From Octopus sinensis (taxonomy: Eukaryota): DNA of 64,000 nt. Below, one piece after another: positions 27,801-63,623 of the stretch. How positions within the stretch are numbered: position 1 is the stretch's first letter; each line of letters opens with the position of its first letter. The stretch is taken from assembly GCF_006345805.1 (NCBI RefSeq), contig NC_043014.1, forward strand, positions 7,626,001-7,690,000, in the 5' to 3' direction. The notes beneath the pieces were generated by a model. That model searched no databases and had not been told where the DNA came from. It saw nothing but the letters and a program-made list of their open reading frames with translations. The translations under genes were made by a program, and so were the position numbers.

Positions 27801-30800
27801 CATCATCATCATCCTCGTTTAATGTCCGCTTTCCATGCTAGCATGGGTTGGACGATTTTGACCGAGTGCTGGCGAACCAGATGGCTGCACCAGGCTCCAA
27901 TCTTGATTTGGCAGAGTTTCTACAGCTGGATGCCCTTCCTAACGCCAACCACTTCGAGAGTGTAGTGGGTGCTTTTTACGTGCCACCAGCTCAGGGGCCA
28001 GTCAGGTGATACTGGCAATGACCTCACTCAAATCTTTTTACACATGCCACCAGCCCAGGTGCCAGCAAGGCGATGTTGGTAACGATCACGCTCTAATGGT
28101 GCCCTTTTACGTGCCACCGGCAGGGAAGCCAGTTGGCTGCTTTGGCAACGATCACGCTTGGATGGTGCTCTTGGAACCCTACTAGCACGGGCACAAGTGC
28201 CAGTAAGGCGACGCTGGTAATGATCATACTCGAATGGTGCCTTTTATGTGCCACTGGTACGGAAGCCGGTTATCCGCTCTGTCAATGATCACGCTCGTAT
28301 GGTGCTCTTTGCACCCCGCTAGTACGGATGCCAGTCATCGAATGTGATTTTGATTTTGATTGTTGTGGTTATATTTCCATATTTGTTAGTGTATGTATGT
28401 GTGGCACTTCCTCGCATATGGTATGGTCATGTGTTACGTATGAATGAAGACAGCTGTGTGAGGAAGTGCCACTCCTTAACTGTAGAAGGAACCTGTAGAA
28501 GAGGTAGATCCAGGAAGACATGGGATGAAGTGGTGAAGCATAACCTTTGAACATTGGGCCTCACAGAGGCAATGATAGGAGACCGGGACCTTTGGAGATA
28601 CGCTGTGATTGAGAAGACCCGGCAACTAATGTGAGATCACAGCTGCACATGTCCGGCCCTGTTAAGAGTACCCCTGGTGTGTCAGGTGATATAATATACT
28701 TGAAAATACTTGTTGAGTCAAGCAAAACCAATATCGTAGCTGTGGCCAGTACACCCTATCAGGCGGCACTGGCATTGACCATGCTCAAATAGTGCTTTTT
28801 ATGTGCCACTGGCACGGGTGCCAGTCAGGCAGTACTGGCATCAGCCACAACTACAATTTCGCTTGACTCAACAGGTCTTCACAAGCACAGTTTATTGCTC
28901 AATGATTGAAAGGTACTTTTTAAATGGGCTGGTTATGTGATATTGGCATCAGCCATGTAAATAAATAATCGTTGCAATTGACAGAACAGTCTGAAAGCTA
29001 AAGGGTTAATACTCTTTTTTGTGTTGGAATGGGTTGAACAGTTTGGCCTGAAGGAACCTGTGAGCCAGAGGGTTGCACCTAGGTCCAAGGTCTGCTTTGG
29101 CATAGTTTCTGCAGTTGGGTGTCTTTCTCTCACTGCCAACCACTTCTCAGAGTGTACTGGATGTTTCTTTGGTTTGTGTGACACCAGCATGGGTGGGGTC
29201 ACCAAGGCCAAGACCCTTTCAAGTGAGTGGGGTGTAGTGTTGAGGGATACGTCAGTATGATACACAGATAGGAGCAAGTGTCTTGCTCAAGAGGTGAATA
29301 CATGGCTTTCCCCACTCGGAAAGAGAGAGAAGGATATGAGAGGTCAAAGTACAAAGTGCATATGGCATAGTGGTTAAGAGCGCGGGCTACTAACCCCAAG
29401 ATTTCAGGTTCGATTCCAGGCAGTGACCTGAATAACAATAATAATAATTAATTCTTTTATTTTTAATAATTAATTCTTTTATAATGACAATAATAATAAT
29501 AATATCAAAAAATACCTTAGGTTAAGAACCCAAGTTCGAAATTTCCCCAAGACACCTGACGAAGGCTGGAGGGTATACCAGCCGAAATGTTGTGTTAACA
29601 ACAAACAAGATGAGGACAAATATCCGTCAAATGTAAATAATGTAAATAATGTAATTTTGTCTTATTTTTTTTTTTCTTTGACAGGGAGTGTAGCGAAATG
29701 TTCCAAAGTCCATAAAATTCCACGAGTGGAAAAGGGAGCCGAGGGTGTGAAAGTGGGTCACACGACACACATATTAGCACTAGCGATATCATCTGATGGA
29801 GAATTTCTGGTGAGTGATTTTTACCAAACTTGTCGTATCTCGCAGACCCTAAGCCCCTTTCTTGTTTACTTTTGGTCTTATTTCTTTGTCTGCCACTGTC
29901 ACAATTGCCCAGTGGTTAGGGCAGCGGACTCGCGGTCGGAGGATCGCGGTTTCAATTCCCAGACCGGGCATTATGAGTGTTTATTGAGCAAAAACACCTA
30001 AAGCTCCATGAGGCTCCGGCAGGGGATGGTGGTGATCCCTGCTGTGCTCTTTCACCACAACTTTCTCTCGCTCTTTCTTCCTGTTTCTGTTGTACCTGTA
30101 TTTCAAAGGGCCAGTCTTGTCACATTCTGTGTGTCACGCTGAATCTCCTCGAGAACTACATTAAGGGTGCACGTGTCTGTGGAGTGCTCAGCCACTTACA
30201 CGTTAATTTCACGAGCAGGCTGTTCCGTTGATTCGGATCAACCGGAACCCTCGTCGTCGTAACCAACGGAGTGCTCCTACTATATTTCTTTGTCTGCCTC
30301 TGTCACAACTGGTGCCCTTTCGTTACCTCTAACCCCTTTTTTCATTGAGGCAGTAAGTTGCTTGATTTGCCAGCAATAGCAACCAAATCTCCTTCAGATT
30401 ATATTGCCTTATCTTAACGAAAAGATGCATTATATAACAAGACCTTAAACATGGGATGGTCATATCTGGAATGTCTTTTGATGATAGATCTATATGCCCC
30501 CCACCGTGTTTGTGTGTGTATCGATGCTACTAGCTTTGATGTTTATAAACAGATTGGGGCATCCTGGCGTTAGGAAGGGCATCCAGCTGTAGAAACACTG
30601 CCAGATCAGACTGGGCCTAGTGCAGCCTTCTGGCTTCCCAGACCCCAGGTGAACTGTTTAACCCATGCTAGCATGGAAAGCGGACGCTAAACGATGATGA
30701 TGATAATTCCTGACGTTAACTGTCCCAAATGAATTCAGGATTCAATTCTTTTCCCATTCGACAACAATGCAAACTATAAAAGCAGAGTTATCTCCCTTGC

Positions 30801-33268: not shown

Positions 33269-36200
33269 TATTATTATTATCTGGAGTTCAATGTTTTTTT
33301 TTTTTTGTTATCTTTAAAGGTGTCGGGTGACAAGAGTAAGTTAATACACATCTGGAATCCAACCAATTGCCAGCATATACAAACGTTTAAGGGTCACCGT
33401 GATGCCATCACAGTAAGTCTTCAAACATTTTGCTTGCATTTCTCCCTACTTCCACCCCTCTACCAAAGGAGGCCCAAGTCCTTTCACACACGCACAAGTA
33501 TGCATGCACAACGGGAACTTCCACCAACCAATTTCAATCACAAGGCTTTGGTCAGCCCAAGGACATTGTCAAAGATACTTGCCCAAGGTGCCACAGTAAG
33601 AATTTAGTAAAATAACTTGGTTATCATTCAGCTAGTGTCAGGAACATAAATTGTGACTAAGGTTTGGTGGAAGATTTTGATTCAGAACTTATGAAAGCAA
33701 GATATTTGTACTCAGAGCCAAAGGTTGTTTTAACCAGGTTGGTAACGAAAGGGTTAAGAATTGTTTCTCTATTATATATATTTTAACCCTTTTGTTACCA
33801 AATTTCTGTTGAGATACTCTGTGTTTCTTTCAATTAATTTTAAATATAACAAAGAATTTAGTAAAATAACCTTATTATCATTAAGATAGTGTTAGGAACA
33901 TAAACTGAGACTAAGGTTTGGTGGAAGATTTTAATTCAAATCTTATGAAAACAGGACATTTGTACTCAGAGCCAGAGTTTGTTTCAATCAAGTTGGCATC
34001 AAAAGGGTTAAGAATTGTTTCTCTATTATATATTTTAACCCTTTCGTTACTGTATTTCTGTTGAGATACTCTATGTTTTTTTTCAATTGATTTTAAATAT
34101 AACAAAGAATTTAGTAAAATAACTTCATTATCATTCAACTAGTGTTAGGAACATAAATTGTGACTAAGGTTTGTGCGAAGATTCTAATTCAGAACTTTTG
34201 AAAACAAGACATTTGTACAACAGAACCAGAGGTGGTTTCAGGTGAGTTGGTACCGAAAGGGTTAAACCAGCCATATCTGGCCCAAATGTTCAACATGTTT
34301 TATGTTTAAATTGTCAAGATCTGATCTCTCACACCTACCCTACAATGTCATTCTAAAAATAAACAATCACATCTTTGAAGTCTCAAAACCACAAGATTAT
34401 CAGCATAATTAATTCAAAACAATGTGAATAATTAGTTATAACATTTGACAGAATAATTTGCATGCTAAAGGGTTAAAACATTAAAACCATTTTTTTGTTC
34501 TTTTGTTATTATTGTAATCTCTCGTTAAATTTAATAATCTTTAATTCTATACTTCTAATTCTCTTTGTTTCTTCAGGGTTTAGCCTTCCGGAAGAATACT
34601 CACCAAATGTTTAGCTGTTCCCAAGACCGTTCTGTGAAAGTGTGGGATTTAGACCAGATGTCCTATGTTGAAACACTGTAAGTTGGTAGCGCCAGCTTCC
34701 CCGATCCAAGAATTCTTCCTAATTTAGGTTTTTTACAAACTGCTTAGAAATAATATCAGTTTGTTATTTATAGGCGCCGGTGTGGCTGTGTGGTAAGAAG
34801 CTTGCTTCCCAACCACATGGTTCTGGGTTCAGTCCCACTGCGTGGCACTTTGGGCAAGTGACTTCTACTATAGCCTCGGGCTACCAAAGCCCTGTGAGTA
34901 GATTTGGTTGATGGAAACTGAAAGAAGCCCATTGTATATGTGTGTGTGTTTGTATATCTGTGTGTGTATATATATGTGGGTGTATGTATATGTGGGTGTG
35001 TGTATATATATATATCTGTGTGTGGTGTCTTTGTCTCTGTTTGTCCCCACCATTGCTTGACAACCGGTGTTGGTGTGTTTACGTCCCCATAACTTAGCAG
35101 TTCAGTAAATAGAGACCAATTGAACAAGTAGTAGACTTTAAAAAAATAAGTCTTGGAGGTTGATTTGTTCGACTAAAACCCTTCAAGGTGGCGGTGCTCC
35201 AGCATGGCCACTGTCAAATGACTGACACTCACAACCATATGGTCATGAGATCAATTCCTGGGGGGTGCATTGTGCCCTTGGGCAAGACACTTCACCTCCC
35301 TTTGCTCCAGTTCAATCACCTGGCAAAAATGAGATGAGTTTTACCAGTAATTCAAAGGGGCCAGCCTTGTCACACTTTGCGTCATGCTGAATCTCCCCGA
35401 GAACTATGCCAAGGTTGCATGTGTCTGTGGAGTACTCAGCCACTAGTGCGTTAATTTCACAAGCTGGCTGTTGTACCACTCTGTTTTCTTTCTATACTCT
35501 ACTGGCTGTATTCAGTAAACATCATCATCATCACCATCATCATCAAACCATGGGTCAGATGGAATTCTTTGAAGCAGAGGTTGTACAGTTGGGTGCCCTT
35601 CCTGTCACCAACCCTCGCCTATCTCCAAGCAGGGTTCTGTTTCCCCTTGGCTGGACATATTTTCATGGCACCCTTGAATGTGAGCAAATTTCCTTATATG
35701 TCACTAACACTCATTTACCATAATCGCTCGATGTCAAGATAAAGGGACACTAACACAATGGGCTTCTTTCAGTTTCCATCTACCGAATCCACTCACAAGG
35801 CTTATGGTTGGCCTGGTGCTATTGTAGAAGACACTTGCCCAAGGTGCCACGCAGTGGGACTGAACACGGATTCATGTGGTTGGGAAGTGATCTTATTAAC
35901 CCCATGGCCATGTTCTCATAATTAGAACCAAACGCCTTATTAAGCCTACCTGCTTGTTTTCTTCACATAAAGGTATTTTGTATTTCACACCTGTACACTT
36001 TGAATTGCTCAGCAGCTGGATTGTTTAAGAAGGACTCGAAAATTGTCACTGCTGATCAAATGGTCATCATCACCATCACCATCATCAGACATTCTGTTAT
36101 CCCTTAGAGTGACCCACTGTTCTTGAGGAGGCCTATTGAGTCAAGTACATCAACATCAAAATAAAAGTTCAATTGGAAATTGCAGTTAAGACACCTGTGC

Positions 36201-45872: not shown

Positions 45873-47507
45873 GTTAGTTGTAGTAATAGTAGTGGAGTAA
45901 CACCTGTATATTAGGCTTGCTCATTATTTACATTATTTACATTTGACGAATATTTGTCCTCATCTTGTTTGTTGTTAACACAACATTTCTGCTGATATAC
46001 CCTCCAGCCTTCATCAGGTGTCTGGGGCAAATTTCGAACCTGGGTTCTCATTCCTAAGGTATTTTTTGATGTTATTATTATTATTATTATTATTATCATT
46101 ATTCAGGTCACTACCTGGAATCGAACTCGGAATCTTGGGGTTAGTAGCCCATGCTCTTAACCACTACGCCGTATGCCCATGGTTAAGAGTGCAGGCTACT
46201 AACCCCAAGACTCCGAGTTCGATTCCAGGCAGTGAACTGAATAATAATAATGACATTGAAAAATACCTTAGGAATGACAACCCAGGCTCGAAATTTCTCC
46301 AAGACACCTGATGAAGGCTGGAGTGTTAGCAAACAAGATGAGGGCAGATATCCATCAAATGTAAATAATGTAAATAATGTAAATAATTCCTCATCTCTTA
46401 AATATAGAACTGTCCTAGGCTTGCTGTTTTGGGGCTTCTGTTTGCATTAACCCTTTAGCATTTAAACCGGCCATATCCGGCCAAAAGTATTCTGCCTGTT
46501 CTATGTTCAAACTGGCCAGATCTGGTCTCTCACACCAACCCTACAATATCATTTTTAAAAAATCTCAAAGCTACAAGATAATGCAGGATTAGTTCAAAGC
46601 AATGTGGATAAAAAAGGATTAATTTTGGTAGAATAATGCGAACACTAAAGGGTTAATTAGTTATCGTATTTAATTCTGTTCCTTTCTTGTTTCCCCATCG
46701 GCAGTTGTCTGTGCTTGTGGAATGTGGCTAAGAAGAAGCCAGTAGCTGTCTGCGTAAAAGCCCATTCTGGGGCAAAGGACGGTGTAAATACAGTGGCTGG
46801 TGAAAACTGGATATCATCCGTTGCAGCTATGCAGCACACAGATTTGGTTGCATCAGGTTAGTGCAGACAAATGCACTTGGTATTTTGTGCATCTCTTTCT
46901 CTCTCCCTGTCTCTCTCTCTGTCTCTCTCTCCCTGTCTCTCTTTCTCTCTCTCTGTCTCTCTCTTTCTCTCTCTCTCCCTGTCTCTCTCTTTCTCTCTCT
47001 CTGTCTCTCTCCCACTCTCTCTTTCTCTCTCTGTCTCTCTCTCTCTCCGTCTCTCTTTCTCTATCTGTCTCTCTCTCTCCCTGTCTCTCTTTCTCTCTCT
47101 TTCTCTATCTGTCTCTCTCTCTCCCTGTCTCTCTTTCTCTCTGTCTCTCTCCTCTCTCTTTCTCTCTCCCTCTCTCTCTGTCTCTCTGTCACTGTCTCTC
47201 TCCCTCTCTTTTTTTGGTTTTATTTATTCTTCTGAGGCTTAGTGGTTCGGGTGTTAAGCTCATTCTTTTACTTGTTTCAGTCATTTTGACTGTGGCCATG
47301 CTGGAGCACCACCTTTAGTTGAGCAAAAACTTTTAGTTGGGGCGAAAGAGTACAGCAGGGATCGCCACCACCCCCTGCTGGAGCCTCGTGGAGCTTTAGG
47401 TGTTTTCGCTCAATAAACACTCACAACGCCCGGTCTGGGAATCGAAACCGCAAGTCCGCTGCCCTAACCATTGGGCCATTGCACCTCCACACACATATAT
47501 ATAATAT

Positions 47508-47561
<54 letters not shown>

Positions 47562-49037
47562 TTCCTTTCTCATTTCCCCACCCGCAGTTGTCTGTGCTTG
47601 TGAAATGTGGCTAAGAAGAAACCAGTAGCTGTCTGCATAAAAGCCCATTCTGGGGCAAAGGACGGTGTAAATACAGTGGCTGGCGAAAACGACGGTGCAT
47701 CAGCATGGCCACAGCTCTGAGCTGAAACTAGAAAAAAAAATATATATACGACAGGCTTCTTTCAGTTTCCATCTATCGAATCCACTCACAAGGCTATAGT
47801 AGAAGAGACTAACCCATGGGCCTACGAATTCTTCGTCTTAACCCTTCATCAGAACCTAATTCTAGATATTTCTTTTTTGTCCCTTTGTCATTAACAGGTT
47901 CTAAAGATGGTTTCCTTCGTTTCTGGAAATGTGGACAAGGCTTTAAGAATCTCAAATCTTTGTTTGCAGTTCAAATTGTGAGTTTCTCTTTTCTCTGTAT
48001 GCTTTTTCGTGTTTGTTTGTTGTAATTCGGTTGTATTTTTTTTCAAAGTTTGGGGTTGGCGCAGAGGTGCATGCTTCACCACAGGACCCTGGTAATATGT
48101 GGGTAGGGTCATGGTACTTCAGAAAGGAGCGTGAATAAGTATTAACCCTTTAGTATTTAAACCGGCCATATCCAGCCAAAATAGCTAATCTGTTTTATGT
48201 TCAAACTGACCAGATCCAGGCTCTCACACCTACCCTACAATGTTATTCTACATTAAGTAATTACACCATCAAGATCTTGAAGATATGAGATAATGCATGA
48301 TTAATTCAAATCAATGAGAATCAATAGGCATTATGTTTGATAGAATAATCTGAACACTAAAGGGTTAAATGAATAAATCTTGGATTAAGTTAAGTTAAGT
48401 TAATTTTTTTGGCTCAAAAAGCAAAAAGCAAGGCCATGTAGGGGGACATGGAGTTAAGTACAGGGTGGTGTTCATGCAAAGAGTTCAGGCCATTTCTGGT
48501 CAAGGGAGACTTTGAACCGAGCGGTCGTTGGCATCTTCACTATCTCGTCCGGCAGCTTATTCCACGGATCCGCAACCCGGACGGAGAAAGCCCCTCTCCT
48601 TTGATTGAGATGAAATCGTCGCAGGTAGAGCTTTTCGAAGTGACCCCGCAGCCGACGCTCTGGAGCAGGAGTGAAGAACAGCTTTTAAAATTTTAATTAG
48701 ACTTTCATCTTCATCATTGTCGCTTAACAGCTATATTCCGTGCAGATATGGGTGGGACAGTTTGATAGGAGCCGGCCAGGCAAGAGCCTGCACCAAACCT
48801 CCACAACTGTTTTGGTAGGACTTTTACAGCTTGATGCCCTTCCTAACACCAACCCAACCACTCAGCAGAGTGGACTAAGTGGTTTTTACATGTCACAAGC
48901 ACAGGCAAGGTCAGTTTTCGCAAGGTTTTTACAGCTGGATGCCCTTCCAAATGCCAACCACATTACTGTGTGGACTGGGTGCTTCTAAGTGGCACCTGCA
49001 CTGATAGGGTCACCAAATACTTGCAAGACAATATATG

Positions 49038-49069
<32 letters not shown>

Positions 49070-50428
49070 ATATCTATATCTATATATATATATATATATA
49101 TGTATTACTCTTTTACTTGTTTTGGCCATTTTGACTGCGGCCATGCTGGAGCACTGCCTTTAGTCGAGCAAATCGACCCTAGGACTTATTCTTTGTAAGC
49201 CTAGTACTTATTCTATCAGTCTCTTTTGCTGAACCGCTAAGTTACAGAATGTAAACACACCAGCAACGGTTGTCAAGTGATGTTGGGGGGACAAATACTG
49301 GCACACAAACATACACATACACACACACGCATGCACACACACATATATATGCATATATACGACAGTAAAGAAATAGGGTAGTAAAGAAATAGGTATTTTG
49401 TCTGCCGTTACGTTCTGAGTTCAAATTCCGCCGAGGTCGACTTTGCCTTTCATCCTTTCGGGGTTGATTAAATAAGTACCAGTTACGCACTGGGGTCGAT
49501 ATAATCGACTTAATCCGTTTGTCTGTCCTTATTTGTCCCCTCTGTGTTTAGCCCCTTGTGGGTAGTAAAGAAATAGGTATTTCGTCTGCTGCTACGTTCT
49601 AAGTTCAAATTCTGCCGAGGTCGACTTTGCCTGTCATCTTTTTGTGGTCGATCAATTCAGTACCAGTTACGCACTGGGGTCGATATAATCAACTTAATCC
49701 ATTTACTCTTTTACTCTCTTTTACTTGTTTCAGTCATTTGATTGTGGCCATGCTGGAGCACCGCCTTTAGTCGAGCAAATCGACCCCGGGACTTATTCTT
49801 TTGTAAGCCCAGTACTTATTCTATCGGTCTCTTTTGCCGAACCGCTAAGTAACGGGGACATAAACACACCAGCATCGATTGTCAAGCAATGCTAGGGGGA
49901 TAAACATAGACACACAAATGCATATATATATATATACGACAGGCTTCTTTCAGTTTCCATCTACCAAATCCACTCACAAGGCTTTGGTCGGCCCGAGGCT
50001 ATAGTAGAAGACACTTGCCCAAGGTGCCACACAGTGGGACTGAACCCGGAACCATGTGGTTGGTAAACAAGCTACTTACCACACAGCCACTCCTGCGTCT
50101 GTCTTTGTTTGTCCCCTCTGTGTTTAACCCCTTGTGGGTAGTAAAGAAATAGATATCTGGTATGCGGAATTTCCATCTGACTACACATGAACAGGCAAGC
50201 TGTTTCCAAGTCCCCTATTTTTGTACATGTATGTTCACGTTGGCATTAATATTTCTTGTTCTTTTTTGTCCCCTCAAATTTCAGCCTGGATTCATCAATT
50301 CCATCCAATTTTCCAAAGACGGGTCCTTCGTTGCGGCTGGCGTCGGTCAAGAACACAAATCTGGCAGATGGTGGCGAATAAAAGAAGCAAAGAATGCTGT
50401 TTGTGTAATCAAGTTACGGACATCTTAG
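16688..50428 (+). CDS. RRP9: U3 snoRNA-interacting protein 2 (U3-55K), WD40 repeat protein; 14 exons, 466 aa
   Basis: Exons 16688-16783, 20346-20398, 21421-21566, 24593-24636, 26541-26582, 27558-27684, 29685-29809, 33320-33412, 34577-34677, 37661-37795, 44602-44664, 46705-46856, 47898-47977, 50285-50428 join in frame with matching phases (1401 nt). Motifs ETAQEKKIRLAKKYL, GHRDAITGLAFRK, FGHQD..GGRDGSVRIWKI.EESQLVF.GH and GQEH..GRWWRIKEAKN match RRP9. Confidence 0.95.
16984..17214. mobile_element. GC-rich MITE in RRP9 intron 1
   Basis: Long TIRs GGTACTA(T/C)TTAAGAAGAGTGGTCCCGGTGCGCGCACTCG. Confidence 0.75.
18014..18921. mobile_element. Same MITE, reversed, with internal triplication
   Basis: Internal units begin at 18090, 18292, 18488. 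Confidence 0.8.
19398..19775 (+). mobile_element. SINE family A
   Basis: Diverged full-length match. Confidence 0.8.
20346..20398 (+). CDS. RRP9: RRP9 exon 2 (EPTESSNNKQEEEIESD)
   Basis: TTTCAG acceptor, AG|GTGAGA donor, phase 0 to 2. Confidence 0.8.
21421..21566 (+). CDS. RRP9: RRP9 exon 3 (acidic region, ETAQEKKIRLAKKYLAEL)
   Basis: CCTTCCAG acceptor, G|GTGAGT donor, conserved motif. Confidence 0.92.
21862..22318. mobile_element. Family G: 171-bp inverted arms plus one-sided 3' extension, between (TA)n tracts
   Basis: 21862-22032 vs 22054-22224 (one mismatch seen); extension homologous to 57061-57155. Confidence 0.85.
22099..22189 (+). ncRNA. Type I hammerhead ribozyme fold; mirror copy at 21897-21987 on the minus strand
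   Basis: CTGAAGA 22105-22111, GAAAC-AATT-GTA 22171-22182, stem I AATTGG/CTAAATT. Confidence 0.7.
22434..22468 (-). ncRNA. Minimal Penelope-type hammerhead fold
   Basis: GTTT-CTGACGA-A-GAG(CTCCA)CTC-GAAA-CGTT-AAAC. Confidence 0.6.
24054..24505 (-). mobile_element. 5'-truncated non-LTR retro-insertion (possibly L1/Tx1-like)
   Basis: Perfect 19-bp TSD CACACAATCTAATTATAAA (24035-24053, 24506-24524); AATAAA at the minus-strand 3' end; clade is a guess. Confidence 0.6.
24593..24636 (+). CDS. RRP9: RRP9 exon 4 (DKRDAISDRLKHDF)
   Basis: TTTTGTAG acceptor, GTAAGT donor, phase 1 to 0. Confidence 0.88.
24735..25468 (+). repeat. Tandem array (3 x about 252 bp) of TTAA-flanked MITE family H
   Basis: Units TTAA|CCTTTT...AAAAGGG|TTAA separated by GAATTGTTTCTCTATTATATATT. 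Confidence 0.85.
25997..26450. mobile_element. Family F head-to-head pair
   Basis: Minus copy 25997-26245; headless plus copy about 26310-26450. Confidence 0.75.
26541..26582 (+). CDS. RRP9: RRP9 exon 5 (LEQSGKLNKQVADE)
   Basis: TTCCAG acceptor, GAG|GTAAGT donor. Confidence 0.88.
26924..27326 (+). mobile_element. Helentron/HINE-like non-autonomous element
   Basis: 5' TACTAGCAGTAT..GCGTTGCTCGGG and 3' CTTTATATATAGAGAT shared with 55176-55561; class inferred. Confidence 0.5.
27558..27684 (+). CDS. RRP9: RRP9 exon 6 (first WD40 repeat, GHKLPITCIVIT...SASKDCSIIKW)
   Basis: TTTTAG acceptor, GTAAGC donor, GH...KW repeat. Confidence 0.93.
28420..28630 (+). mobile_element. RTE LINE C-terminal fragment
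   Basis: WYGHVLRMNEDSCVRKC..GRSRKTWDEVV..DRDLWR. Confidence 0.8.
29357..29655 (+). mobile_element. Family F: tRNA-headed SINE-like element with a hammerhead ribozyme fold
   Basis: Head TGGCATAGTGGTTAAGAGCG...GGTTCGATTCC, AT-rich linker, hammerhead at 29551-29596, (AATGTAAAT)n tail. Confidence 0.75.
29551..29596 (+). ncRNA. Minimal type I hammerhead fold in family F
   Basis: GACAC-CTGACGA-A-GGCTGG(AGGGTATA)CCAGCC-GAAA-TGTT-GTGTT. Confidence 0.65.
29685..29809 (+). CDS. RRP9: RRP9 exon 7 (GHTTHILALAISSDGEFL)
   Basis: GACAG acceptor, CTG|GTGAGT donor. Confidence 0.93.
29905..30282 (+). mobile_element. tRNA-derived SINE family E
   Basis: GCCCAGTGGTTAGGGCAGCGGACTCGCG head; 26-bp flanking direct repeat (25/26); relatives at 47340-47495 (-) and 57360-57570 (+). 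Confidence 0.75.
30964..31775. mobile_element. Same MITE carrying a nested SINE A
   Basis: TIRs intact; colinear with 11727-12142 once the SINE is removed. Confidence 0.8.
31014..31404 (+). mobile_element. SINE family A nested in a MITE
   Basis: GTAACT duplicated at 31008-31013 and 31405-31410. Confidence 0.85.
31840..32245 (-). mobile_element. SINE family A
   Basis: Diverged match. Confidence 0.75.
32764..33176 (+). mobile_element. SINE family A
   Basis: Full-length match. Confidence 0.85.
33320..33412 (+). CDS. RRP9: RRP9 exon 8 (VSGDKSKLIHIW...GHRDAIT)
   Basis: AAG acceptor (non-YAG), GTAAGT donor, phase 0 to 0. Confidence 0.9.
33598..34265 (+). repeat. Tandem array of MITE family H (about 2.7 units)
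   Basis: Same unit and spacer. Confidence 0.85.
34577..34677 (+). CDS. RRP9: RRP9 exon 9 (GLAFRKNTHQMFSCSQDRSVKVWD...YVETL)
   Basis: TTCAG acceptor, GTAAGT donor. Confidence 0.93.
34772..35225 (+). mobile_element. SINE family A
   Basis: Diverged full-length match. Confidence 0.75.
36810..37506 (+). repeat. Tandem array of MITE family H (about 3 units)
   Basis: Same unit and spacer. Confidence 0.85.
37661..37795 (+). CDS. RRP9: RRP9 exon 10 (FGHQDTIT...GGRDGSVRIWKILEESQLVFNGH)
   Basis: TTCCAG acceptor, GTAAGT donor. Confidence 0.95.
37848..38240 (+). mobile_element. SINE family A
   Basis: Full-length match just after exon 10. Confidence 0.85.
39000..44333. repeat. 5.3-kb compound (AAT)n satellite in RRP9 intron 10
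   Basis: AAT runs punctuated by recurring AATATATTGATAATAATAATAACAAT. Confidence 0.97.
44602..44664 (+). CDS. RRP9: RRP9 exon 11 (GSIDCISLINDSCFISGGDD)
   Basis: TACAG acceptor, GTATGA donor, phase 2 to 2. Confidence 0.92.
45253..45690 (+). mobile_element. 5'-truncated RTE (BovB-like) LINE end
   Basis: GRIPKDILYGEL..GRPFLRYKDVCKRDMK..WE..A.NR..WR; remnant Cys/His finger; (CAA)n tail. Confidence 0.8.
45921..46412. mobile_element. Family F head-to-head pair
   Basis: Minus copy 45921-46178 directly abutting plus copy 46179-46412. Confidence 0.8.
46447..46656. mobile_element. TTAA-flanked MITE family I
   Basis: TTAA|CCCTTTAG...CTAAAGGG|TTAA; relatives at 48142-48368 and 34262-34475. Confidence 0.8.
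46705..46856 (+). CDS. RRP9: RRP9 exon 12 (CLCLWNVAKKKP...WISSVAAMQHTDLVASG)
   Basis: GGCAG acceptor, CAG|GTTAGT donor. Confidence 0.93.
46890..47205. repeat. (CT)n/(CTGT) microsatellite in intron 12
   Basis: Direct inspection. Confidence 0.95.
47570..47690 (+). pseudogene. Truncated duplicate of RRP9 exon 12 with acceptor and premature stop
   Basis: 47588-47690 matches 46705-46807; TGG changed to TGA at 47601-47603; acceptor CCCCACCCGCAG retained. Confidence 0.9.
47898..47977 (+). CDS. RRP9: RRP9 exon 13 (SKDGFLRFWKCGQGFKNLKSLFAVQI)
   Basis: AACAG acceptor, GTGAGT donor. Confidence 0.93.
48385..48686 (-). mobile_element. CR1-type LINE 3' fragment
   Basis: Minus-strand frame LRGHFEKL..RRGAFSVRVADPWNKLPDEIV..FKVSLD*, (TTAAC)n tail. 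Confidence 0.85.
49083..50152. mobile_element. Nested cluster: two minus-strand SINE A copies interleaved with tandem plus-strand SINE B units
   Basis: A at 49083-49365 (truncated), B units at 49393-49700, A at 49705-50098, B unit resumes at 50099-50152. Confidence 0.75.
50285..50428 (+). CDS. RRP9: RRP9 exon 14, terminal (PGFINSIQFS...GQEHKSGRWWRIKEAKNAVCVIKLRTS*)
   Basis: TTTCAG acceptor, TAG stop at 50426-50428. Confidence 0.95.
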   Translation, partial: PGFINSIQFSKDGSFVAAGVGQEHKSGRWWRIKEAKNAVCVIKLRTS

Positions 50429-51686: not shown

Positions 51687-52574
51687 GTACTCCCTGAATG
51701 GCTCTTGTGCCTGTGGCACTTAAAAAGCACCATCTGAATGTGGCCAATGCCAGTACTGTCCAACGGGCCCCCGTGCCGGTGGCTTGTAAAAAAGCACCAA
51801 CCAAACATGGCCGATGCCAGTACCCACTGACTGGCCTTCATGCTGGTGGCGCGTAAAAAACACTATCCGAACATGATCAATGCTAGGTCCGCCCAAGCGG
51901 CACCTGTGCGGTGGCACGTAAAAAGCACCCACTACACTCTCAGAGTGGTTGGCATTAGGAAGGGCATCCAACTGTAAAAACATTGCCAGATCAGACTGGA
52001 GCCTAGCGCAGCTGCTGGCTTTCCAGACCTCAGTCAAACCGTCCAACCCATGCCAGCATGGAAAACGGACGTTAAAAGATGATGATTTGTAAATATGAAT
52101 GAGGTGATAGAAGAACTTGGGTACAAGAGGAACGAGATGCAATGTTAAAAGATAGAGGACTTCTTTGATATCTTGCATTTTGTATTTATTATTTGTTTCA
52201 GTCAGTAAACTGTGGCCATACTGGAACACCACTTTGAAAGGGTTTTAGCCAGACAAATCAAAACTGGTATTTAATTTTAAAAAAAATCTTTTCCTAGTTT
52301 GCTACTTATTCTATGGGTTTGTTGAAATGCTAAATTACAAGAATGTAACCAAACCAACACGGGTTGTCAAGCATTGGGTGGGGGGGGGGAAGCACACACA
52401 TACGTGTTAATCATTTTCATTTAACGTCCTTGGATGGGGCTGACAGACTGCACCCTTTCTCTCTTTCACTCACACACATACACCATCTTCATCACTTTCA
52501 TTTCACATGCTTGCATGTGTTGCATAGAATGCACACACACATAATCATTATCATTTAATATCCTCGGCAAGCCG

Positions 52575-53860
52575 TGGCGGTGGCACGTAAAAAGCACCAT
52601 CCGATCGAGGCCGTTTGCCAGCCTCGTTTGGCACCTGTGCAGGTGGCACGTTAAAAGCACCATCCGATCGAGGCCGTTTGCCAGCCTCGTCTGGCCCCCA
52701 TGCCGGTGGGACGTAAAAAGCACCATCTGATCGTGGCTGTTTGCCAGCCTCGTCTGGCCCCCATGCCGTGTGGACGTAAAAAAGCACCATCTGATCGTGG
52801 CGTTTTGCCAGCCTCGTCTGGCCCCCATGCCGGTGGCACGTAAAAAGCACCATCTGATCGTGGCTGTTTGCCAGCCTCGTCTGGCCCCCATGCCGGTGGC
52901 ACGTAAAAAGCACCATCTGATCGTGGCTGTTTGCCAGCCTCGTCTGGCCCCCATGCCGGTGGCACGTAAAAAGCACCATCTGATCTCGGCTGTTTTGCCA
53001 GCCTCGTCTGGCCCCCATGCCGGTGGCACCACGTAAAAAGCACCATCTGATCGTGGCTTTTTGCCCAGCCTCGTCTGGCCCCCATGCCGGTGGCACGTAA
53101 AAAGCACCATCCTATCGTGGCTGTTTGCCAGCCTCGTCTGCCCCCATGCCGGTGGCACATAAAAAGCACCATCCTATCGTGGCTGTTTGCAGCCCATCTG
53201 GCCCCCATGCCGGTGGCACGTAAAAAGCACCATCTGATCGTGGCCGTTTGCCAGCCTCGTTTGGCCCCCATGCCGGTGGCACGTAAAAAGCACCATCTGA
53301 TCGTGGCTGTTTGCCAGATCGTCTGGCCCCCATGCGGTGGCACATAAAAAGCACCATCCGATCGTGGCTGTTTGCCAGCCTCATCTGGCCCCCATGCCGG
53401 TGGCACGTAAAAAGCACCATCTGATCGTGGCTGTTTGCCAGCCTCGTCTGGCCCCCATGCCGGTGGCACGTAAAAAGCACCATCCGATCGTGGCTGTTTG
53501 CCAGCCTCATCTGGCCCCCATGCCGGTGGCACATAAAAAGCACCATCCGATCGTGGCTGTTTGCCAGCCTCGTCTGGCCCCCATGCCGGTGGCACATAAA
53601 AAGCACCATCCGATCGTGGCCGTTTGCCAGCCTCGTCTGGCCCCCATGCCGGTGGCACGTAAAAAGCACCATCCGATCGTGGCTGTTTGCCAGCCTCATC
53701 TGGCCCCCATGCCGGTGGCACGTAAAAAGCACCATCCGATTGTGGCCGTTGCCAGCCTCGTCTGGCCCCCATGCCGGTGGCACGTAAAAAGCACCATCCG
53801 ATCATGGCTGTTTGCCAGCCTCGTCTGGCCCCTGTGCAGGTGGCACGTAAAAAGCACCCA
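52575..53860 (+). repeat. 63-bp minisatellite, about 20 units, inside a family D element
   Basis: Unit CCATGCCGGTGGCACGTAAAAAGCACCATCTGATCGTGGCTGTTTGCCAGCCTCGTCTGGCCC; 21 AAAAGCACC cores counted. Confidence 0.95.
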
Positions 53861-57309: not shown

Positions 57310-58999
57310 GTATATATATATATGTATGTGTATATATATATATGTATATATTTGTGTGTGTGGAGGCGCAATGGCCCAGTGGTTAGGGCAGCGGACTCGC
57401 GGTCGTAGGATCACGGTTTCGATTCCCAGATGTGTGTGCATTCCGTGCAACTCATGCAAGCATGTGAGTGTTTATTGAGCGAAAACACCTAAAAGCTCCA
57501 CGGTCCTCCGGCAGGCGGTTGGTGGCGATCCCTGCTGTACTCTTTCGCCACAACTTTCTCTCACTTTTGACCAGCGATGTGTGGCAACATCTGATAGCCT
57601 GGTCGGTCATGGCGATCACGGCGATATATATATATATTACTATATATATATATATATATATATACATTTCGAAATACGGAGTAGACGAAACGGGGACAAC
57701 TGAAGAAGGGGAATATTCCTTGTGTTGTATGTCTTGTACTCTGTTTTTTCGTTGTTTGAAAAAAAGTTCGTTTCCAGGCTTAGGTCGGCCCGAAGGTACT
57801 CGTCCAATGTGCCACGCAGTGGAAATGAACCCGGAACCATGTGGTTAGCAAGCAAGCTACTTACTACACAGCCACTCATGAGCCTATACACACACAAAAT
57901 ATGGAGGTTTCGTTCACAGGTGATCTAAACGTGTAGGTACGCTGGGTAAGTGCTATAACGGATTACCAAGGCTGCAAGGTTTATAGCCGAGCCGGGAGTT
58001 ATGCAACCATTGCAGATATCCGACACAGCGGATATATATAATTGTTAAAGAGGACAGCAAACGTTAAGGCAAGGCAAACATCTCAAGTCATACGTTATTA
58101 TCATTGGAAAAATTCAAAGTCCCAGCTGTTTCTGGGATATTCCGTCATCGGAGACAAACAGGGAAAATGTGAAGGGTAGATCCACGATTCCCAACGTGGG
58201 GCACGGTAATAATTTGGTGAGGTATGCAAAAGAAAGGGGGCAATTCGCGAATGAGTTATTAAGAAAAGAAATTCTTTACATCCCACTTCTGTGGACAATT
58301 TTAACAAATTTTTGACACTTTAGAGACAACAGAACAACAGGTCGTGTTCAATACCAGACATAGATTTTTGACAAGATTTGATGTCGCTAATGAGGAAATC
58401 GCGCGTGCGTGTGTGCGGTAGACATGAGACAGAGAAAATGAATTATGAACGACTTGTTCACAAACACCCGTCAGTAGGGAACAGTTCTCAAAAATAGTCC
58501 CAAATTCCTATGTTCTCGGAAACTACATAATCCAAGGTATATTTGTAGCGAATTTCATTAAAAAATATCCATTTTCTTGAAAGTTAAGACGAATTTAATT
58601 GGACTCAGGAGAAATTTCCAAAATTCCTCACCCCAACCCCTCTTCAAACATTTCCCCCGCAAAATCTTGTATATTCGGAATCTACATAATATAACACATA
58701 TTCGTAGACAATTTCATTAAGAATATCTATTTTTTAATGAAAGTTATGATCATCCAAAGTCGGGGGCGCAGAAATCTGTAGTTATGCCGATTTAAAAAAC
58801 TACAGTAGTGCAGGTAAAAAACAAATCGTCAATGTTGAGAGCAATATTTACTCGTTTTACAAATCAATTTTCCCCATTGAAATTAACTAAAATATAATTA
58901 ATCCGTTCCAGAGCTACCAAAAGCCACTCAAAAAGGATTTTTTATCGCTTTTTATGTGATGTAGATGAGGTGAAAGAAGAACTTGGGTAAAAGAGGAAC

Positions 59000-59133
59000 C
59001 TTTCATCCTTTCGGGGTCGATAAATTAAGTACCAGTTACGCACTGGGGTCGATGTAATCGACTTAATACCTATGTCTGTCCTTGTTTGTCCCCTCTATGT
59101 TTAGCCCCTTGTGGGTAGTAAAGAAATAGGTAT
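59000..59133 (+). mobile_element. SINE family B 3' fragment with TSD
   Basis: 9-bp TSD AAGAGGAAC (58991-58999, 59134-59142). Confidence 0.85.
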
Positions 59134-59346
59134 AAGAGGAACGAGATGCAATGTTAAAAGATAGAGGACTTCTTTGATATCTTGCATTTTGTATTTATTA
59201 TTTGTTTCAGTCAGTAAACTGTGGCCATACTGGAACACCACTTTGAAAGGGTTTTAGCCAGACAAATCAACACCCAGGGTTTTATAAAAGAAGGTGTAGT
59301 TACGAATGAAATGGCGATTATAAAAAAAGAGAATGCAAAAGAAATA

Positions 59347-60590: not shown

Positions 60591-60965
60591 ATTTTATTTT
60601 ATTTTATCTAGTTTCAGCTCACGAGCTGTGGCCATGCTGGGGCACCGCCATTTGGTGTTGCTACATGATTTTACTTCACGAATGCTTTTTAGCAATTGCC
60701 ATTTGGTGCATGAGAGAGTTCGATGCTGCTGCCCTCATCTGCACCTCCTGCCGTGAAGTTGGTTCATCTGGGACACCTGACAAGAAGAGATCCAGTTTTA
60801 TTTTAAAGACATCTGCATCCACCCCATGCAGGTCTCTTAGGTTCTTCGGGAGGATATTAAAGAGCTGTGGGCCTCTGAAGCCCAGGCTATCACAGAATCT
60901 TGTCCTACATCTTGATGGCAAATTTGGAGTCCTTGGCACTATGCAGTGGCGCCCAGTTCTAGTAT
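60591..60965 (-). mobile_element. CR1-group LINE 3' fragment
   Basis: GFRGPQLFNILPKNLRD..FKIKLDLFLSGVPDEP..RAAASNSL; (TAAAA)n tail. Confidence 0.75.
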
Positions 60966-61066
60966 TTGTGTAACTCTCGATACATACATACAGACAGACA
61001 CACGCACATGAAAATATTTGGTTCATTTTGCTTTACATTTCTCGTTTTTTGCACAACTTGGCTAAA

Positions 61067-61166
61067 NNNNNNNNNNNNNNNNNNNNNNNNNNNNNNNNNN
61101 NNNNNNNNNNNNNNNNNNNNNNNNNNNNNNNNNNNNNNNNNNNNNNNNNNNNNNNNNNNNNNNNNN
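61067..61166. other. Assembly gap (100 N)
   Basis: Run of N. Confidence 1.
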
Positions 61167-61671: not shown

Positions 61672-63623
61672 ATTCCTTCCTCTCTTTCGTCCAATCTTTC
61701 CATCCAGCCCTCCACTTCACTTCCACTATCTCCAACACCTCTGTCTCCTTCCTCGACATTTCGGTTAGCATTCTTCACTCACCTCTACCACCTCCATTCA
61801 CTACAAACACACAGACTCACACTCATACCTCAACTTCTCTTCCTCCCACCCAGAAACACACAAGCTTTCATCCCCTATTCCCAATTCCTCCGTTCTACGT
61901 AGGCTCTGTAGTGACGACCATGACTTTGAGACTCAGTCTCAACGTACGGCTCACCACTTCACCCTACGTGATACCCCCTCACCACCCTTGCCAGAGCACG
62001 GTCCGTGGACCGTGTATCTGCTCTCTCTCCCCGAACCCGCCCTGTAGTCTCCCGCCTCCATTTTCCCCTCACTTACCACCCCACGACCCTAGTCTCCAAC
62101 GCACCATTCTTCGAGCTTTCCGTCATCTCCAGTCCGACCCGTCCACTTCACACCTCTTCCCTAACCGACCCTCCCCTCTTTCAAACGAGCCCCAACCTTC
62201 GAGACCTTTTGGTCCATAGCTCCTTCCTGACCCTACCTCCCAACCCGGCTCGTTCCCCTGCTCCCGCCCACGTTGCCGCACTTGCCCTTACCTCTCCAAC
62301 ACCACCGCCTCATAGCACCCAACATCGACCCTATCCCATCATCCACTCCTTCACCTGCACCTCCAGCAATATTATCTATTGCATCTCTTGCTCTCTCTCA
62401 GCAATTCCTTGTACATCGGACAAACGGGACGCCGCTTGGCTGACCGGTTCGCGGAACACCTTCGTGGACATCCACCTTGCGAACGACACACCGGTCTCAC
62501 GCCATTTCCGCTCCACCGGTCACTCCTTGCAACACCTATCTGTGTTCGGTTTGTCCTTACACAGAGGCCATCCGGATTCCCGTTTCGCCGTGAACAGGAA
62601 TTATCTTCTCTCTTCGCTCTTATACGCCATTTGGTCTCAACTCTCCCCCCCTCCTATCTAACCCCCTCTCCCCCTCCTCACCTATCCTTTCCCCCGACCC
62701 CTACTTCTTCAGTCCTTCATCATTTCACCCCTACTCCCCTCCCTTCTTCCCTTTTCTCCCTCCCTCTTCCCCTTCCCTCTGCTCCCTCACTCCCTCTTCC
62801 CCTTCTCTCTCCCCTCTCCCTCTTTCCTCCTTCATCCCCCTTCTCACCTTCCTTCTCCCCCATCCTCTACTCTTCCCCCCTCTCCTCCCCTTTCTTCTTC
62901 CCTCCCCTTTCCCCCCTCTTCCCCCCTCCCCCTCTTCTCCTCACTACACCACATGACTTACACATCACATCACATATGATGTGCCATACTAATAAACACA
63001 CCAAACTAATACATACTAATACGTACTAATACATACTAGTACATACTAATACTTACACCAACCCTATACATACACACGTCCAGACCCCGCATACGCACTT
63101 ATACTCTCTCATACACACACACACACCTATACATACCAATACGTACTAATACATACTAATACATACTAATACATACACCAACCCCATACATACGCACGTC
63201 CAGACCAATCTTACGCACTAATACTCTCTCATACACACACACACACACACACACACCCTATACATACTAATACATACACCAACCCTATACATACACACAT
63301 CCAGACCCCTCCCACGCACTTTTAGCTGGTCCCTCAACCTTTTATCAACCCTATTATCTCCCTTATTTCGCTCTCGCGTCTCATGTTTGATCTTTGACCT
63401 CTGGCCGAAATCAGATCGCCATGTTGATTCGTTAGCTACTGCACGCATTTTTTCTCTCTCTTCTTTCTGTGTTTTTCTCTCTCTGTGTATCTTTCTGTTG
63501 AAGAGCGTAGGCTCGAAACGTTAAAGACTTGTTTTATTTATATTTCCTGAGCGCCATACTAATACAATTGTTCGTTGTTTTCCACCTGCCTTCATCTTTT
63601 GTTTATTTTCATAAAGCTTCCCG

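What the first reader, a model, noticed from the sequence alone, without database searches (positions are those of the whole stretch)
47570..47740. Partial RRP9 exon 12 duplicate fused to a LINE 3' tail (candidate template-switch chimera)
Seen: about 18 nt of intron 11 acceptor plus the first 103 nt of exon 12 are repeated about 880 bp downstream. Directly after them comes GACGGTGCATCAGCATGGCCACAGCTCTGAGCTGAAACTAGA and an A-run. This matches the 3' end of the LINE at 60591-60650 (CAGCATGGCCACAGCTCGTGAGCTGAAACTAGA) better than it matches the SINE A tail. The unit lies in a (TA)n tract. Inference: the RT started on LINE RNA and switched to local RRP9 pre-mRNA or DNA, as in U6/L1-type chimeras. 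The copy keeps an acceptor and has TGA at 47601, so it could act as a decoy or poison acceptor.
Basis: partly seen in the sequence, partly recalled or inferred. Interest (0 to 1): 0.7.

Follow-up and report, generated by a model that had tools for sequence, protein, structure and literature searches.

The report
Gene fragment fused to LINE tail
A 179-base insertion in an intron of the RRP9 gene joins a decayed copy of the nearby splice acceptor and half-exon to the last 42 bases of a LINE retrotransposon, most likely a by-product of one retrotransposon integration; this kind of event is known and there is no evidence that it has a function.

Summary
Positions 46679-46807 (26 nt of intron plus the first 103 nt of a conserved RRP9 exon) recur at 47562-47690, gapless, with 8 mismatches (94%). 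Directly after them come 42 nt (47691-47732) and an A-run. The 42 nt match the 3' end of the element at 60591-60650(-) at 39/42, and 22 SINE tails at no more than 35/42. That element is a real 5'-truncated LINE: its ORF is 66% identical to the C-terminus of a 984-aa endonuclease plus reverse-transcriptase protein. Three related LINE 3' ends from other assemblies carry the same two-hairpin tail after their stop codon. The (TA)n tract follows a SINE head. All but one of the other 18 copies of that head in the window run straight into a microsatellite, and none carries this insert, so the 179 bp behave as one discrete insertion.

The best explanation (about 0.6) is one target-primed reverse transcription event. 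The reverse transcriptase (RT) copied only the LINE tail module and then switched to local RRP9 sequence. Nascent pre-mRNA and DNA cannot be told apart as the second template.

The decoy-acceptor idea is untested, and the copy lacks the likely branch point. No orthologous site could be fetched. This is an ordinary member of a known class; interest is low to moderate.

The parts
46679..46807 (+).
   Evidence: Gapless 129-nt match to 47562-47690
46705..46856 (+). RRP9 coding exon (152 nt); the donor GT is at 46857-58
   Evidence: The translation, spliced to the next exon, aligns with human RRP9 residues 347-415, E 3e-16; sequence read
47898..47977 (+). Next RRP9 exon (80 nt). The insert therefore lies in the 1041-nt intron between the two exons, in the sense orientation of the gene
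47562..47690 (+). Decayed copy of the acceptor plus half-exon. It has 8 substitutions, 7 of them transitions and none A-to-G. AG is at 47586-87 and the in-frame TGA at 47601-03
47691..47732 (+). LINE 3' terminal module with two hairpins: GAC-GGTGC..GCAT-GCC and CAGCTC-T-GAGCTG, followed by GAAACTAGA
   Evidence: 39/42 identity to 60602-60650(-) against at most 35/42 for SINE tails. The same module follows the stop codon of related LINEs L001, L002 and L003.
47733..47740 (+). A-run (nine consecutive A counting 47732). It is the 3' end of the insertion and differs from the LINE's own (TAAAA)n by two T-to-A changes
47495..47561 (.). (TA)n tract to the left of the insert, the target microsatellite
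   Evidence: TRF period 2, 35 copies
47741..47749 (.). TATATATAC: the remainder of the same microsatellite to the right of the insert. A possible target-site duplication here is unreadable
47750..47816 (-). Head fragment of the abundant SINE (SINE-A). In all but one of its other copies this head runs straight into a (TA)n(TG)n or (TG)n microsatellite
   Evidence: 19 head matches in the window. Of the other 18, all but the copy at 35757 run straight into a microsatellite, and none carries an RRP9/LINE-tail insert
47263..47488 (-). Second, tRNA-like SINE (SINE-B head) carrying the SINE-type tail. It lies between the source and the copy, next to (TG)n(TA)n
   Evidence: ARAGORN calls no tRNA here
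60591..60975 (-). 5'-truncated LINE: the last ~99 codons of ORF2 (stop at 60676-78), an 85-nt 3' UTR ending in the two-hairpin module, and (TAAAA)3
   Evidence: ORF 66% identical to residues 883-974 of the 984-aa protein P0004, which has Exo_endo_phos and RVT_1 domains. Sequence read

Best explanation
The 179 bp at 47562-47740 are one retrotransposon-mediated insertion into a (TA)n microsatellite inside an RRP9 intron.

Proposed steps, all inferred:
1. A LINE reverse transcriptase (RT) nicked the TA-rich target.
2. It primed on the A/T-rich end of a LINE RNA, or of an unsampled SINE RNA with the same tail.
3. It copied only the 42-nt two-hairpin module that this stringent-type LINE family and its SINEs share.
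4. It left that template at the base of the first hairpin and continued on local RRP9 sequence of the same sense (46807 back to 46679).
5. The product was joined to the upstream TA tract.

The second template was either nascent unspliced RRP9 pre-mRNA at the locus or the exposed top DNA strand 0.75-0.9 kb upstream of the break. I rate these about equally.

Shown: the duplicate, the LINE identity of the tail, the direct sense-sense fusion, and the insertion-like relation to paralogous SINE copies. Inferred: that it was a single event, that an RT made it, and which template was used.

The copy has since decayed neutrally (one nonsense, one missense and two synonymous changes in the exon part). 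It most likely has no function.
For: 1. The two parts abut with no spacer, both in sense, with the LINE tail and A-run on the 3' side.
2. The tail is LINE-type: 39/42 against at most 35/42 for SINE tails. The reference element is a genuine LINE ORF2 3' end. Three related LINEs from other assemblies have the same module right after their stop codon.
3. The retained 42 nt are exactly the conserved two-hairpin unit. 3 of its 12 pairs show compensatory changes across 10 LINE and SINE tails, and z-scores are -3.3 to -4.1 for the four LINE and SINE reference tails (the insert's own, decayed tail gives z = -0.85). This is the part an RT of a stringent-type LINE must engage first (PMC3747384).
4. All but one of the other 18 copies of the host SINE head run straight into a microsatellite, and none carries this insert. 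The unit is therefore an insertion.
5. The source lies 883 bp upstream in the same gene and orientation. For a donor unrelated to the site this would have a chance of roughly 1 in a million in a Gb-sized genome, so the second template was local.
6. RT template switching and templated insertions or small duplications at LINE integration sites are documented (PMC2104539; bioRxiv 10.1101/2025.02.02.635956; PMC11702581).
Against: 1. No readable target-site duplication or endonuclease motif, because the target is a microsatellite.
2. No orthologous or population empty site.
3. No clear microhomology at either junction. This fits RT jumping but proves nothing.
4. The A-run is not the LINE's usual (TAAAA)n.
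5. The in-window LINE copy is about as diverged from the tail (93%) as the exon is from its copy (94%), so an RT-free route copying both from nearby DNA is not excluded.
6. Only one LINE-type reference tail is present in the window.
Confidence: 0.6

Rival explanations
1. Two independent events. Either a local (tandem or dispersed) duplication of the exon start came first and a very short 5'-truncated LINE insertion then removed the rest of the copy, or a 50-bp LINE fragment came first and the RRP9 patch was added exactly at its 5' end later.
For: Local duplications and heavily truncated LINE inserts are each common. The offset (883 bp) equals the distance from the start of the source to the TA tract, as a tandem duplication would give. 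LINE insertions with target deletions are known (PMC11702581).
Against: This needs two rare events whose breakpoints coincide to the base. Downstream of the A-run nothing resembles the source region beyond 46807. Apart from the insert, the flanks read as one interrupted microsatellite of a SINE.
Confidence: 0.2
2. RT-independent repair or replication error at a fragile (TA)n tract (MMBIR/FoSTeS or polymerase-theta templated insertion). It would have copied two nearby DNA templates in series: 46679-46807 in direct orientation and a genomic LINE 3' end, for example the inverted copy 13 kb downstream.
For: Both pieces have possible DNA donors within 13 kb at similar divergence, 94% and 93%. Long (TA)n tracts are known to be fragile (general knowledge). 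There is no readable target-site duplication.
Against: The second piece is exactly the 3'-terminal module of the LINE and ends at the element's natural 3' end with an A-rich run next to the target. That is expected for TPRT and a coincidence for random templated synthesis. There is no microhomology of 2 nt or more at the junctions. Templated insertions of 129 nt plus 50 nt are long for polymerase theta (general knowledge).
Confidence: 0.12
3. An RNA-level fusion formed before reverse transcription (RtcB-type ligation or trans-splicing of an RRP9 pre-mRNA fragment to a LINE 3' fragment), followed by ordinary retrotransposition of the fused RNA.
For: This route is demonstrated for U6/L1 (PMC6789731) and proposed for mRNA/L1 chimeras.
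Against: A free fused RNA would integrate anywhere, so landing 0.9 kb from its own source is unexplained. There is no splice donor at the exon-side junction (GAAAAC|TGG in the source).
Confidence: 0.03
4. An assembly artefact: a misjoin in the (TA)n tract that brought in sequence from another locus.
For: Microsatellites are frequent misassembly points. The window contains an N gap elsewhere (61067-61166).
Against: The copy differs from the source at 8 of 129 positions, with a decay-like pattern. Both junctions lie in unique sequence, not in the repeat. The flanks continue as one SINE.
Confidence: 0.05

Closest known systems
Bipartite and tripartite LINE template-switch chimeric retrocopies: U6/L1 and other small-RNA/L1 chimeras in mammals, and MGL-LINE/WEIRD/Mg-SINE chimeras in Magnaporthe (PMC2104539; bioRxiv 10.1101/2025.02.02.635956)
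   Same: A 5'-truncated LINE 3' end with its tail lies on the 3' side. A foreign sequence is fused directly to its 5' end in the same sense, and the whole behaves as one insertion.
   Different: The LINE is a stringent-type element with a hairpin tail, not L1 or MGL, and only 42 nt of it are retained. The partner is an unspliced fragment with an intron-exon junction from the host gene itself, 0.9 kb upstream, not an abundant dispersed RNA. A target-site duplication cannot be verified.
Local sequence alterations at LINE-1 integration sites: small tandem duplications, templated insertions and template-switching RT seen in experimental L1 expression and in tumours (PMC11702581; PMC7058536)
   Same: A LINE segment sits at a breakpoint together with a duplicated piece of nearby target DNA, attributed there to processing of the two DNA ends or to RT template switching.
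   Different: Those are somatic or experimental human L1 events. This is a fixed, about 6% diverged germline event by a different LINE clade in an invertebrate-type, SINE-rich genome.
Birth of SINEs by fusion of a LINE 3' tail to another RNA: tRNA or 5S heads with RTE or CR1 tails, and de novo SINE emergence in passerines (PMC5729268; PMC3747384)
   Same: The product is 'foreign 5' part plus the minimal LINE tail module', the same architecture that makes a sequence mobilisable by a stringent-type LINE.
   Different: The 5' part has no internal pol III promoter, and there is no sign of amplification: no second copy in the window and none in the metagenome scan.
Eel UnaL2/UnaSINE1-type stringent LINE/SINE pairs (described in PMC3747384)
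   Same: LINE and SINE share a conserved 3' stem-loop module followed by short tandem repeats. Compensatory changes keep the stems.
   Different: The clade was not determined by phylogeny here. The tail has two hairpins, and its repeat units are (TAAAA)n, (TTAAA)n and (GTAAAAGA)n.

Membership tests
LINE template-switch chimeric retrocopy | The 3' part is the 3' end of a LINE, 5'-truncated and carrying the element's own tail | tested here: met
   39/42 identity to the LINE tail at 60602-60650(-). The LINE status of that element is shown through a 984-aa endonuclease plus reverse-transcriptase homologue. The same module lies downstream of the stop codon in L001, L002 and L003
LINE template-switch chimeric retrocopy | The 5' part is a copy of another transcript, fused directly and in the same sense as the LINE part | tested here: inconclusive
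   Direct fusion and sense-sense orientation are met. Whether the template was RNA is unknown. The piece is unspliced and shows no A-to-G (editing-type) differences
LINE template-switch chimeric retrocopy | The whole chimera is flanked by one target-site duplication at an endonuclease-type site | tested here: inconclusive
   Both flanks are (TA)n. Any TA-repeat duplication would be invisible, and the endonuclease preference of this LINE is unknown
LINE template-switch chimeric retrocopy | An empty site exists, meaning the unit is absent from the pre-insertion allele | tested here: inconclusive
   Paralogous proxy only: of the other 18 copies of the host SINE head, all but one run straight into a microsatellite and none carries this insert. 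The true orthologous site could not be obtained
Stringent-type LINE/SINE pair with a shared 3' tail | An autonomous LINE with endonuclease and reverse transcriptase whose 3' UTR end is shared with a SINE | tested here: met
   P0004 has Exo_endo_phos and RVT_1 domains. The LINE and SINE tails align
Stringent-type LINE/SINE pair with a shared 3' tail | A conserved stem-loop with compensatory substitutions, followed by short tandem repeats | tested here: met
   Two hairpins, with 3 of 12 pairs showing changes on both sides. z-scores are -3.3 to -4.1 for the four LINE and SINE reference tails; the insert's own, decayed tail gives z = -0.85. The tails end in (TAAAA)n, (TTAAA)n or (GTAAAAGA)n
Stringent-type LINE/SINE pair with a shared 3' tail | The tail is required for retrotransposition | not testable with these tools
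   This needs a retrotransposition assay
CR1/L2-clade LINE | Phylogenetic placement of the RT domain within the clade | not tested
   The only pointers are the domain content (endonuclease plus RT, no RNase H, about 980 aa) and a C-terminal LYSLERRRERY motif in homologue P0001. I recall that motif from CR1-like elements. This is a lead, not a test
Poison exon or decoy splice acceptor | The site is used by the spliceosome, shown by junction reads, with NMD-sensitive products | not testable with these tools
   Only the sequence could be read. Pyrimidines make up 20 of the 23 positions before the CAG in the copy against 19 of 23 in the source, and the TGA is in frame. The best branch-point candidate of the source (TTAAT, 46670-74) lies outside the copied segment

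The most novel reading that the evidence does not exclude
The second template was the nascent, still unspliced RRP9 transcript at the integration site, possibly the lariat intermediate. The copy is in the sense of transcription. It contains an unspliced intron-exon junction. Its 5' end (46679) lies 5-6 nt downstream of the best branch-point candidate (TTAAT, 46670-74), where an RT would be blocked. If this is right, the locus is a fossil of a LINE integration caught in the act inside a gene being transcribed. It would also show a route by which LINE RTs duplicate splice sites and exon pieces locally, giving raw material for exon duplication or poison exons.
Probability: 0.2. Interest if true: 0.55.

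Novelty: new member of a known kind. Interest (0 to 1): 0.3.

Why it matters
If the reading is right, a non-L1, stringent-type LINE also produces chimeric insertions by leaving its template right after the tail module. It also means the captured partner can be the host gene's own unspliced sequence next to the integration site. That is a small-scale route to intragenic duplication of splice signals, and it is the same kind of fusion that gives rise to new SINEs. For RRP9 itself the most likely consequence is none: the copy is decayed, intronic and has no donor site.

A practical by-product is a clean description of this genome's LINE/SINE tail module (two covarying hairpins plus short repeats). 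This is useful for repeat annotation.

Tried and rejected
1. Orthologous or other-species locus. A protein search with the exon peptide found nothing, not even the window's own protein, so this genome and its close relatives are not in that collection as annotated proteins. A scan of metagenome contigs for the 21-nt junction gave 10 hits that match only the pattern itself, so they are chance matches in unrelated contigs.

2. Pfam on the 116-aa LINE ORF fragment and on a nearby 218-aa ORF gave no family. LINE status was obtained instead through full-length homologues.

3. ARAGORN finds no tRNA in 47100-48000, so the tRNA-like look of the second SINE stays an impression.

4. Mapping the whole gene by concatenated ORF segments gave too much low-complexity sequence to submit. 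Several further RRP9-like exons are visible by eye, but I did not check the exon numbering.

5. Large target-site duplication was rejected. The two copies do not flank the LINE piece.

6. Copying from the neighbouring inverted SINE tail (47263-47330) was rejected. The diagnostic second hairpin and the CTAGA end are LINE-type.

7. 'The exon derives from the element' was rejected. The exon encodes conserved RRP9 residues.

8. An RNA-editing signature was looked for as evidence of an RNA template. None of the 8 differences is A-to-G, which is uninformative.

9. The species was not identified. The repeats look cephalopod-like from memory, and I did not test this.

Full report
**What is in the sequence**

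Reading 46300-48300 and aligning the two stretches confirms the duplicate. 46679-46807 and 47562-47690 match without gaps over 129 nt, with 8 mismatches (94%), 883 bp apart on the same strand. A sensitive self-search finds no third copy in the window.

The source comprises the last 26 nt of an intron (pyrimidine tract and CAG, AG at 46703-04) and the first 103 nt of a 152-nt exon (46705-46856). The next exon is 47898-47977. The spliced peptide of the two exons aligns with human U3 snoRNA-interacting protein 2 (RRP9/U3-55K) at residues 347-415 of 475 (E 3e-16). So the gene assignment is right and the exon, not the downstream copy, is the original. I did not verify the label 'exon 12'; further RRP9-like exons are visible upstream and downstream.

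The copy carries TGG to TGA at 47601-03 in the RRP9 frame, one missense and two synonymous changes, plus four changes in the 26 intronic bases. Seven of the eight are transitions and none is A-to-G. This is the pattern of a neutrally decaying copy.

**The tail**

Directly after the copy come 42 nt (47691-47732, GACGGTGCATCAGCATGGCCACAGCTCTGAGCTGAAACTAGA), then eight more A, then TATATATAC.

The core CAGCATGGCC motif occurs 18 times in the window within two mismatches (23 other sites at three mismatches; expected 0.06). All but two of those 18 belong to SINE tails that continue CAGT-CAAATGACTGAAACAAGTAAAAGAG. Only the finding and 60602-60650(-) have CAGC-TC(G)TGAGCTGAAACTAGA. Identity of the 42 nt is 39/42 to the 60.6-kb element and 29-35/42 to 22 other tails.

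**Is the 60.6-kb element a LINE?**

Yes. On the minus strand an ORF ends at 60676-78, followed by an 85-nt 3' UTR that ends in the tail and (TAAAA)3.

- Its last 99 codons have 834 relatives at E no greater than 0.001.
- The best relative (P0004, 66% identity, E 9e-31) aligns at residues 883-974 of a 984-aa protein. That protein and other 970-1020-aa hits carry Exo_endo_phos and RVT_1 domains.
- The window copy is 5'-truncated at about 60975.
- Three related LINE 3' ends from other assemblies show the same module directly downstream of the stop codon: L001 from NCBI GCA_024449705.1, and L002 and L003 from ENA assemblies, L003 being full length.

The module folds into two adjacent hairpins. z-scores are -3.3 to -4.1 for the four LINE and SINE reference tails; the insert's own, decayed tail gives z = -0.85. 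In an alignment of ten LINE and SINE tails, 3 of the 12 pairs keep pairing through changes on both sides, for example CAGCTC/GAGCTG, CAGTCA/TGACTG and CAGCCA/TGGCTG.

This is the arrangement described for 'stringent-type' LINE/SINE pairs, in which the RT recognises the 3' stem-loop and the elements end in short repeats (PMC3747384). The clade (CR1/L2-like, judging from domain content and a C-terminal motif I recall) was not tested.

The 42 nt in the finding are exactly this module and begin at the base of the first hairpin. That hairpin has one A-C mismatch in the insert.

**The target**

The (TA)n tract is not anonymous. The sequence right of the insert (47750-~47816, minus strand) is the head of the window's abundant SINE. 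That head occurs 19 times. Of the other 18 copies, all but the one at 35757 run straight from ...GAAGCCTGTCG into a (TA)n(TG)n or (TG)n microsatellite, and none carries an RRP9 or LINE-tail insert. Here the head is followed by TATATATAT, then the 179-bp unit, then 67 bp of (TA)n, then (TG)n and a second, tRNA-like SINE (47263-47488; other copies at 29.9 and 57.4 kb).

These paralogues serve as a proxy for the empty site. The RRP9 piece, the tail and the A-run together look like one discrete insertion into a microsatellite. Because the target is a repeat, a target-site duplication cannot be read. The intron (1041 nt) is otherwise almost entirely a CT-rich microsatellite plus these SINEs.

**Mechanism**

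The architecture is: foreign sense sequence, then the 5'-truncated LINE 3' end, then the A-rich end, then an A/T-rich target. This is the architecture of LINE template-switch chimeras (PMC2104539; Law and Burns).

The most economical account is one target-primed reverse transcription event. In it the RT copied only the tail module and then moved to a second template.

That second template must have been local. A donor independent of the site would land within 1 kb of its source with a chance of about one in a million in a Gb-sized genome.

Two local templates fit:
- Nascent, unspliced RRP9 pre-mRNA. The copy is in the sense of transcription and contains an unspliced junction.
- The top DNA strand, exposed by resection upstream of the break, copied and released.

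Small duplications, templated insertions and template-switching RT at L1 integration sites are documented experimentally (PMC11702581).

I cannot separate the two. The sense orientation gives at most a two-fold preference for RNA. The copy starts 5-6 nt downstream of the best branch-point candidate (TTAAT, 46670-74), where an RT on a lariat intermediate would stop. This is suggestive, but it was noticed post hoc and rests on a consensus match only. Neither junction shows microhomology of 2 nt or more.

**Rivals**

- Two independent events with coinciding breakpoints, including tandem duplication followed by a LINE insertion with a target deletion. Possible but less economical (0.2).
- RT-free templated repair or replication at the fragile TA tract, using the exon and a nearby LINE copy as DNA donors. 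It is not excluded, because both parts are about 93-94% identical to in-window sequences. It does not explain why the second piece is precisely the element's terminal module, ending at its natural 3' end against the target (0.12).
- RNA ligation or trans-splicing before RT. This leaves the local position unexplained, and no donor site exists at the junction (0.03).
- Misassembly. Unlikely given the 6% divergence and junctions in unique sequence (0.05).

**Function**

The copy keeps a good pyrimidine tract and CAG: pyrimidines make up 20 of the 23 positions before the CAG, against 19 of 23 in the source. It did not carry the source's likely branch point, is preceded by (TA)n, and has no convincing donor downstream before the next exon. 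Use as a decoy acceptor is possible in principle but has no support here. I rate the element as most likely inert.

**What could not be done**

No orthologous locus, population data, long reads or RNA-seq were reachable. The protein collection lacks this genome, and the metagenome scan returned only chance matches. I did not identify the species. The repeat content resembles what is reported for octopus genomes (LINE about 13%, SINE about 12%; PMC13282606), but that is context, not evidence.

**Verdict**

The locus is a new example of a known class: a LINE-associated chimeric insertion or local templated duplication, here by a non-L1, hairpin-tailed LINE with a local unspliced gene fragment as partner. 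Interest is low to moderate.

Noticed in passing
window, 19 sites (e.g. 2305, 11142, 12385, 31158, 37990, 49938, 56325, 59492, 61479): An abundant composite SINE. It has a tRNA-like head ending in GGAAACTGAAAGAAGCCTGTCG, an internal (TA)n(TG)n microsatellite of very variable length, and a body whose last ~45 nt are the LINE-like two-hairpin tail plus (GTAAAAGA)n. The internal microsatellite may act as a hotspot for later insertions and recombination between SINE modules.
   Followed up: partly
window 47263-47488(-), 29902-30062(+), 57358-57555(+): A second, tRNA-like SINE head (GGAGGYGCAATGGCCCARTGGTTAGGGCAGCGGACT...). Only the 47-kb copy carries the LINE/SINE-type tail; the other two continue differently. 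Two of the three copies are preceded by (TA)n(TG)n. This may reflect module swapping between SINE families at the microsatellite. ARAGORN calls no tRNA.
   Followed up: partly
L002 610-707, L003 3235-3291, window ~49540-49580 (minus strand, downstream of the SINE at 49741): The string TTTCTTTACTACCCACAAGGGGCTA.ACA.AGAGG(GGACAAA) follows LINE or SINE tails in three unrelated loci, in two cases immediately after the tail repeats. It is either another very abundant repeat or a preferred target or partner of this LINE family.
   Followed up: no
window 52572-53858: A minisatellite with a ~63-bp period and about 20 copies at 90-93% identity, seen as a ladder of self-matches.
   Followed up: no
window 52121-52262 and 59129-59270: A 142-bp segment repeated at 99.3% identity 7 kb apart, including a variant SINE-type tail (CAGTATGGCCACAGTTTACTGACTGAAAC) and identical 3' flanks. 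This points to a recent segmental duplication or an assembly duplication.
   Followed up: no
window 46892-47209: A 318-bp CT-rich compound microsatellite (periods 8, 10, 12 and 34) starting 35 nt after the exon's donor site. Together with the SINEs it makes up nearly the whole 1041-nt intron.
   Followed up: no
window 61067-61166: A 100-N assembly gap about 90 bp beyond the 5' end of the truncated LINE fragment. The true 5' extent of that LINE copy is therefore uncertain.
   Followed up: yes
window 62005-63029(+): Two overlapping reading frames with proline/serine-rich sequence and a stretch resembling a GIY-YIG-type motif (LYIGQTGRRLADRFAEH; PVSRHF..GH). It may be a decayed Penelope-like element. 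Pfam gave no hit for the one frame tested, which does not contain the LYIGQTG stretch.
   Followed up: partly
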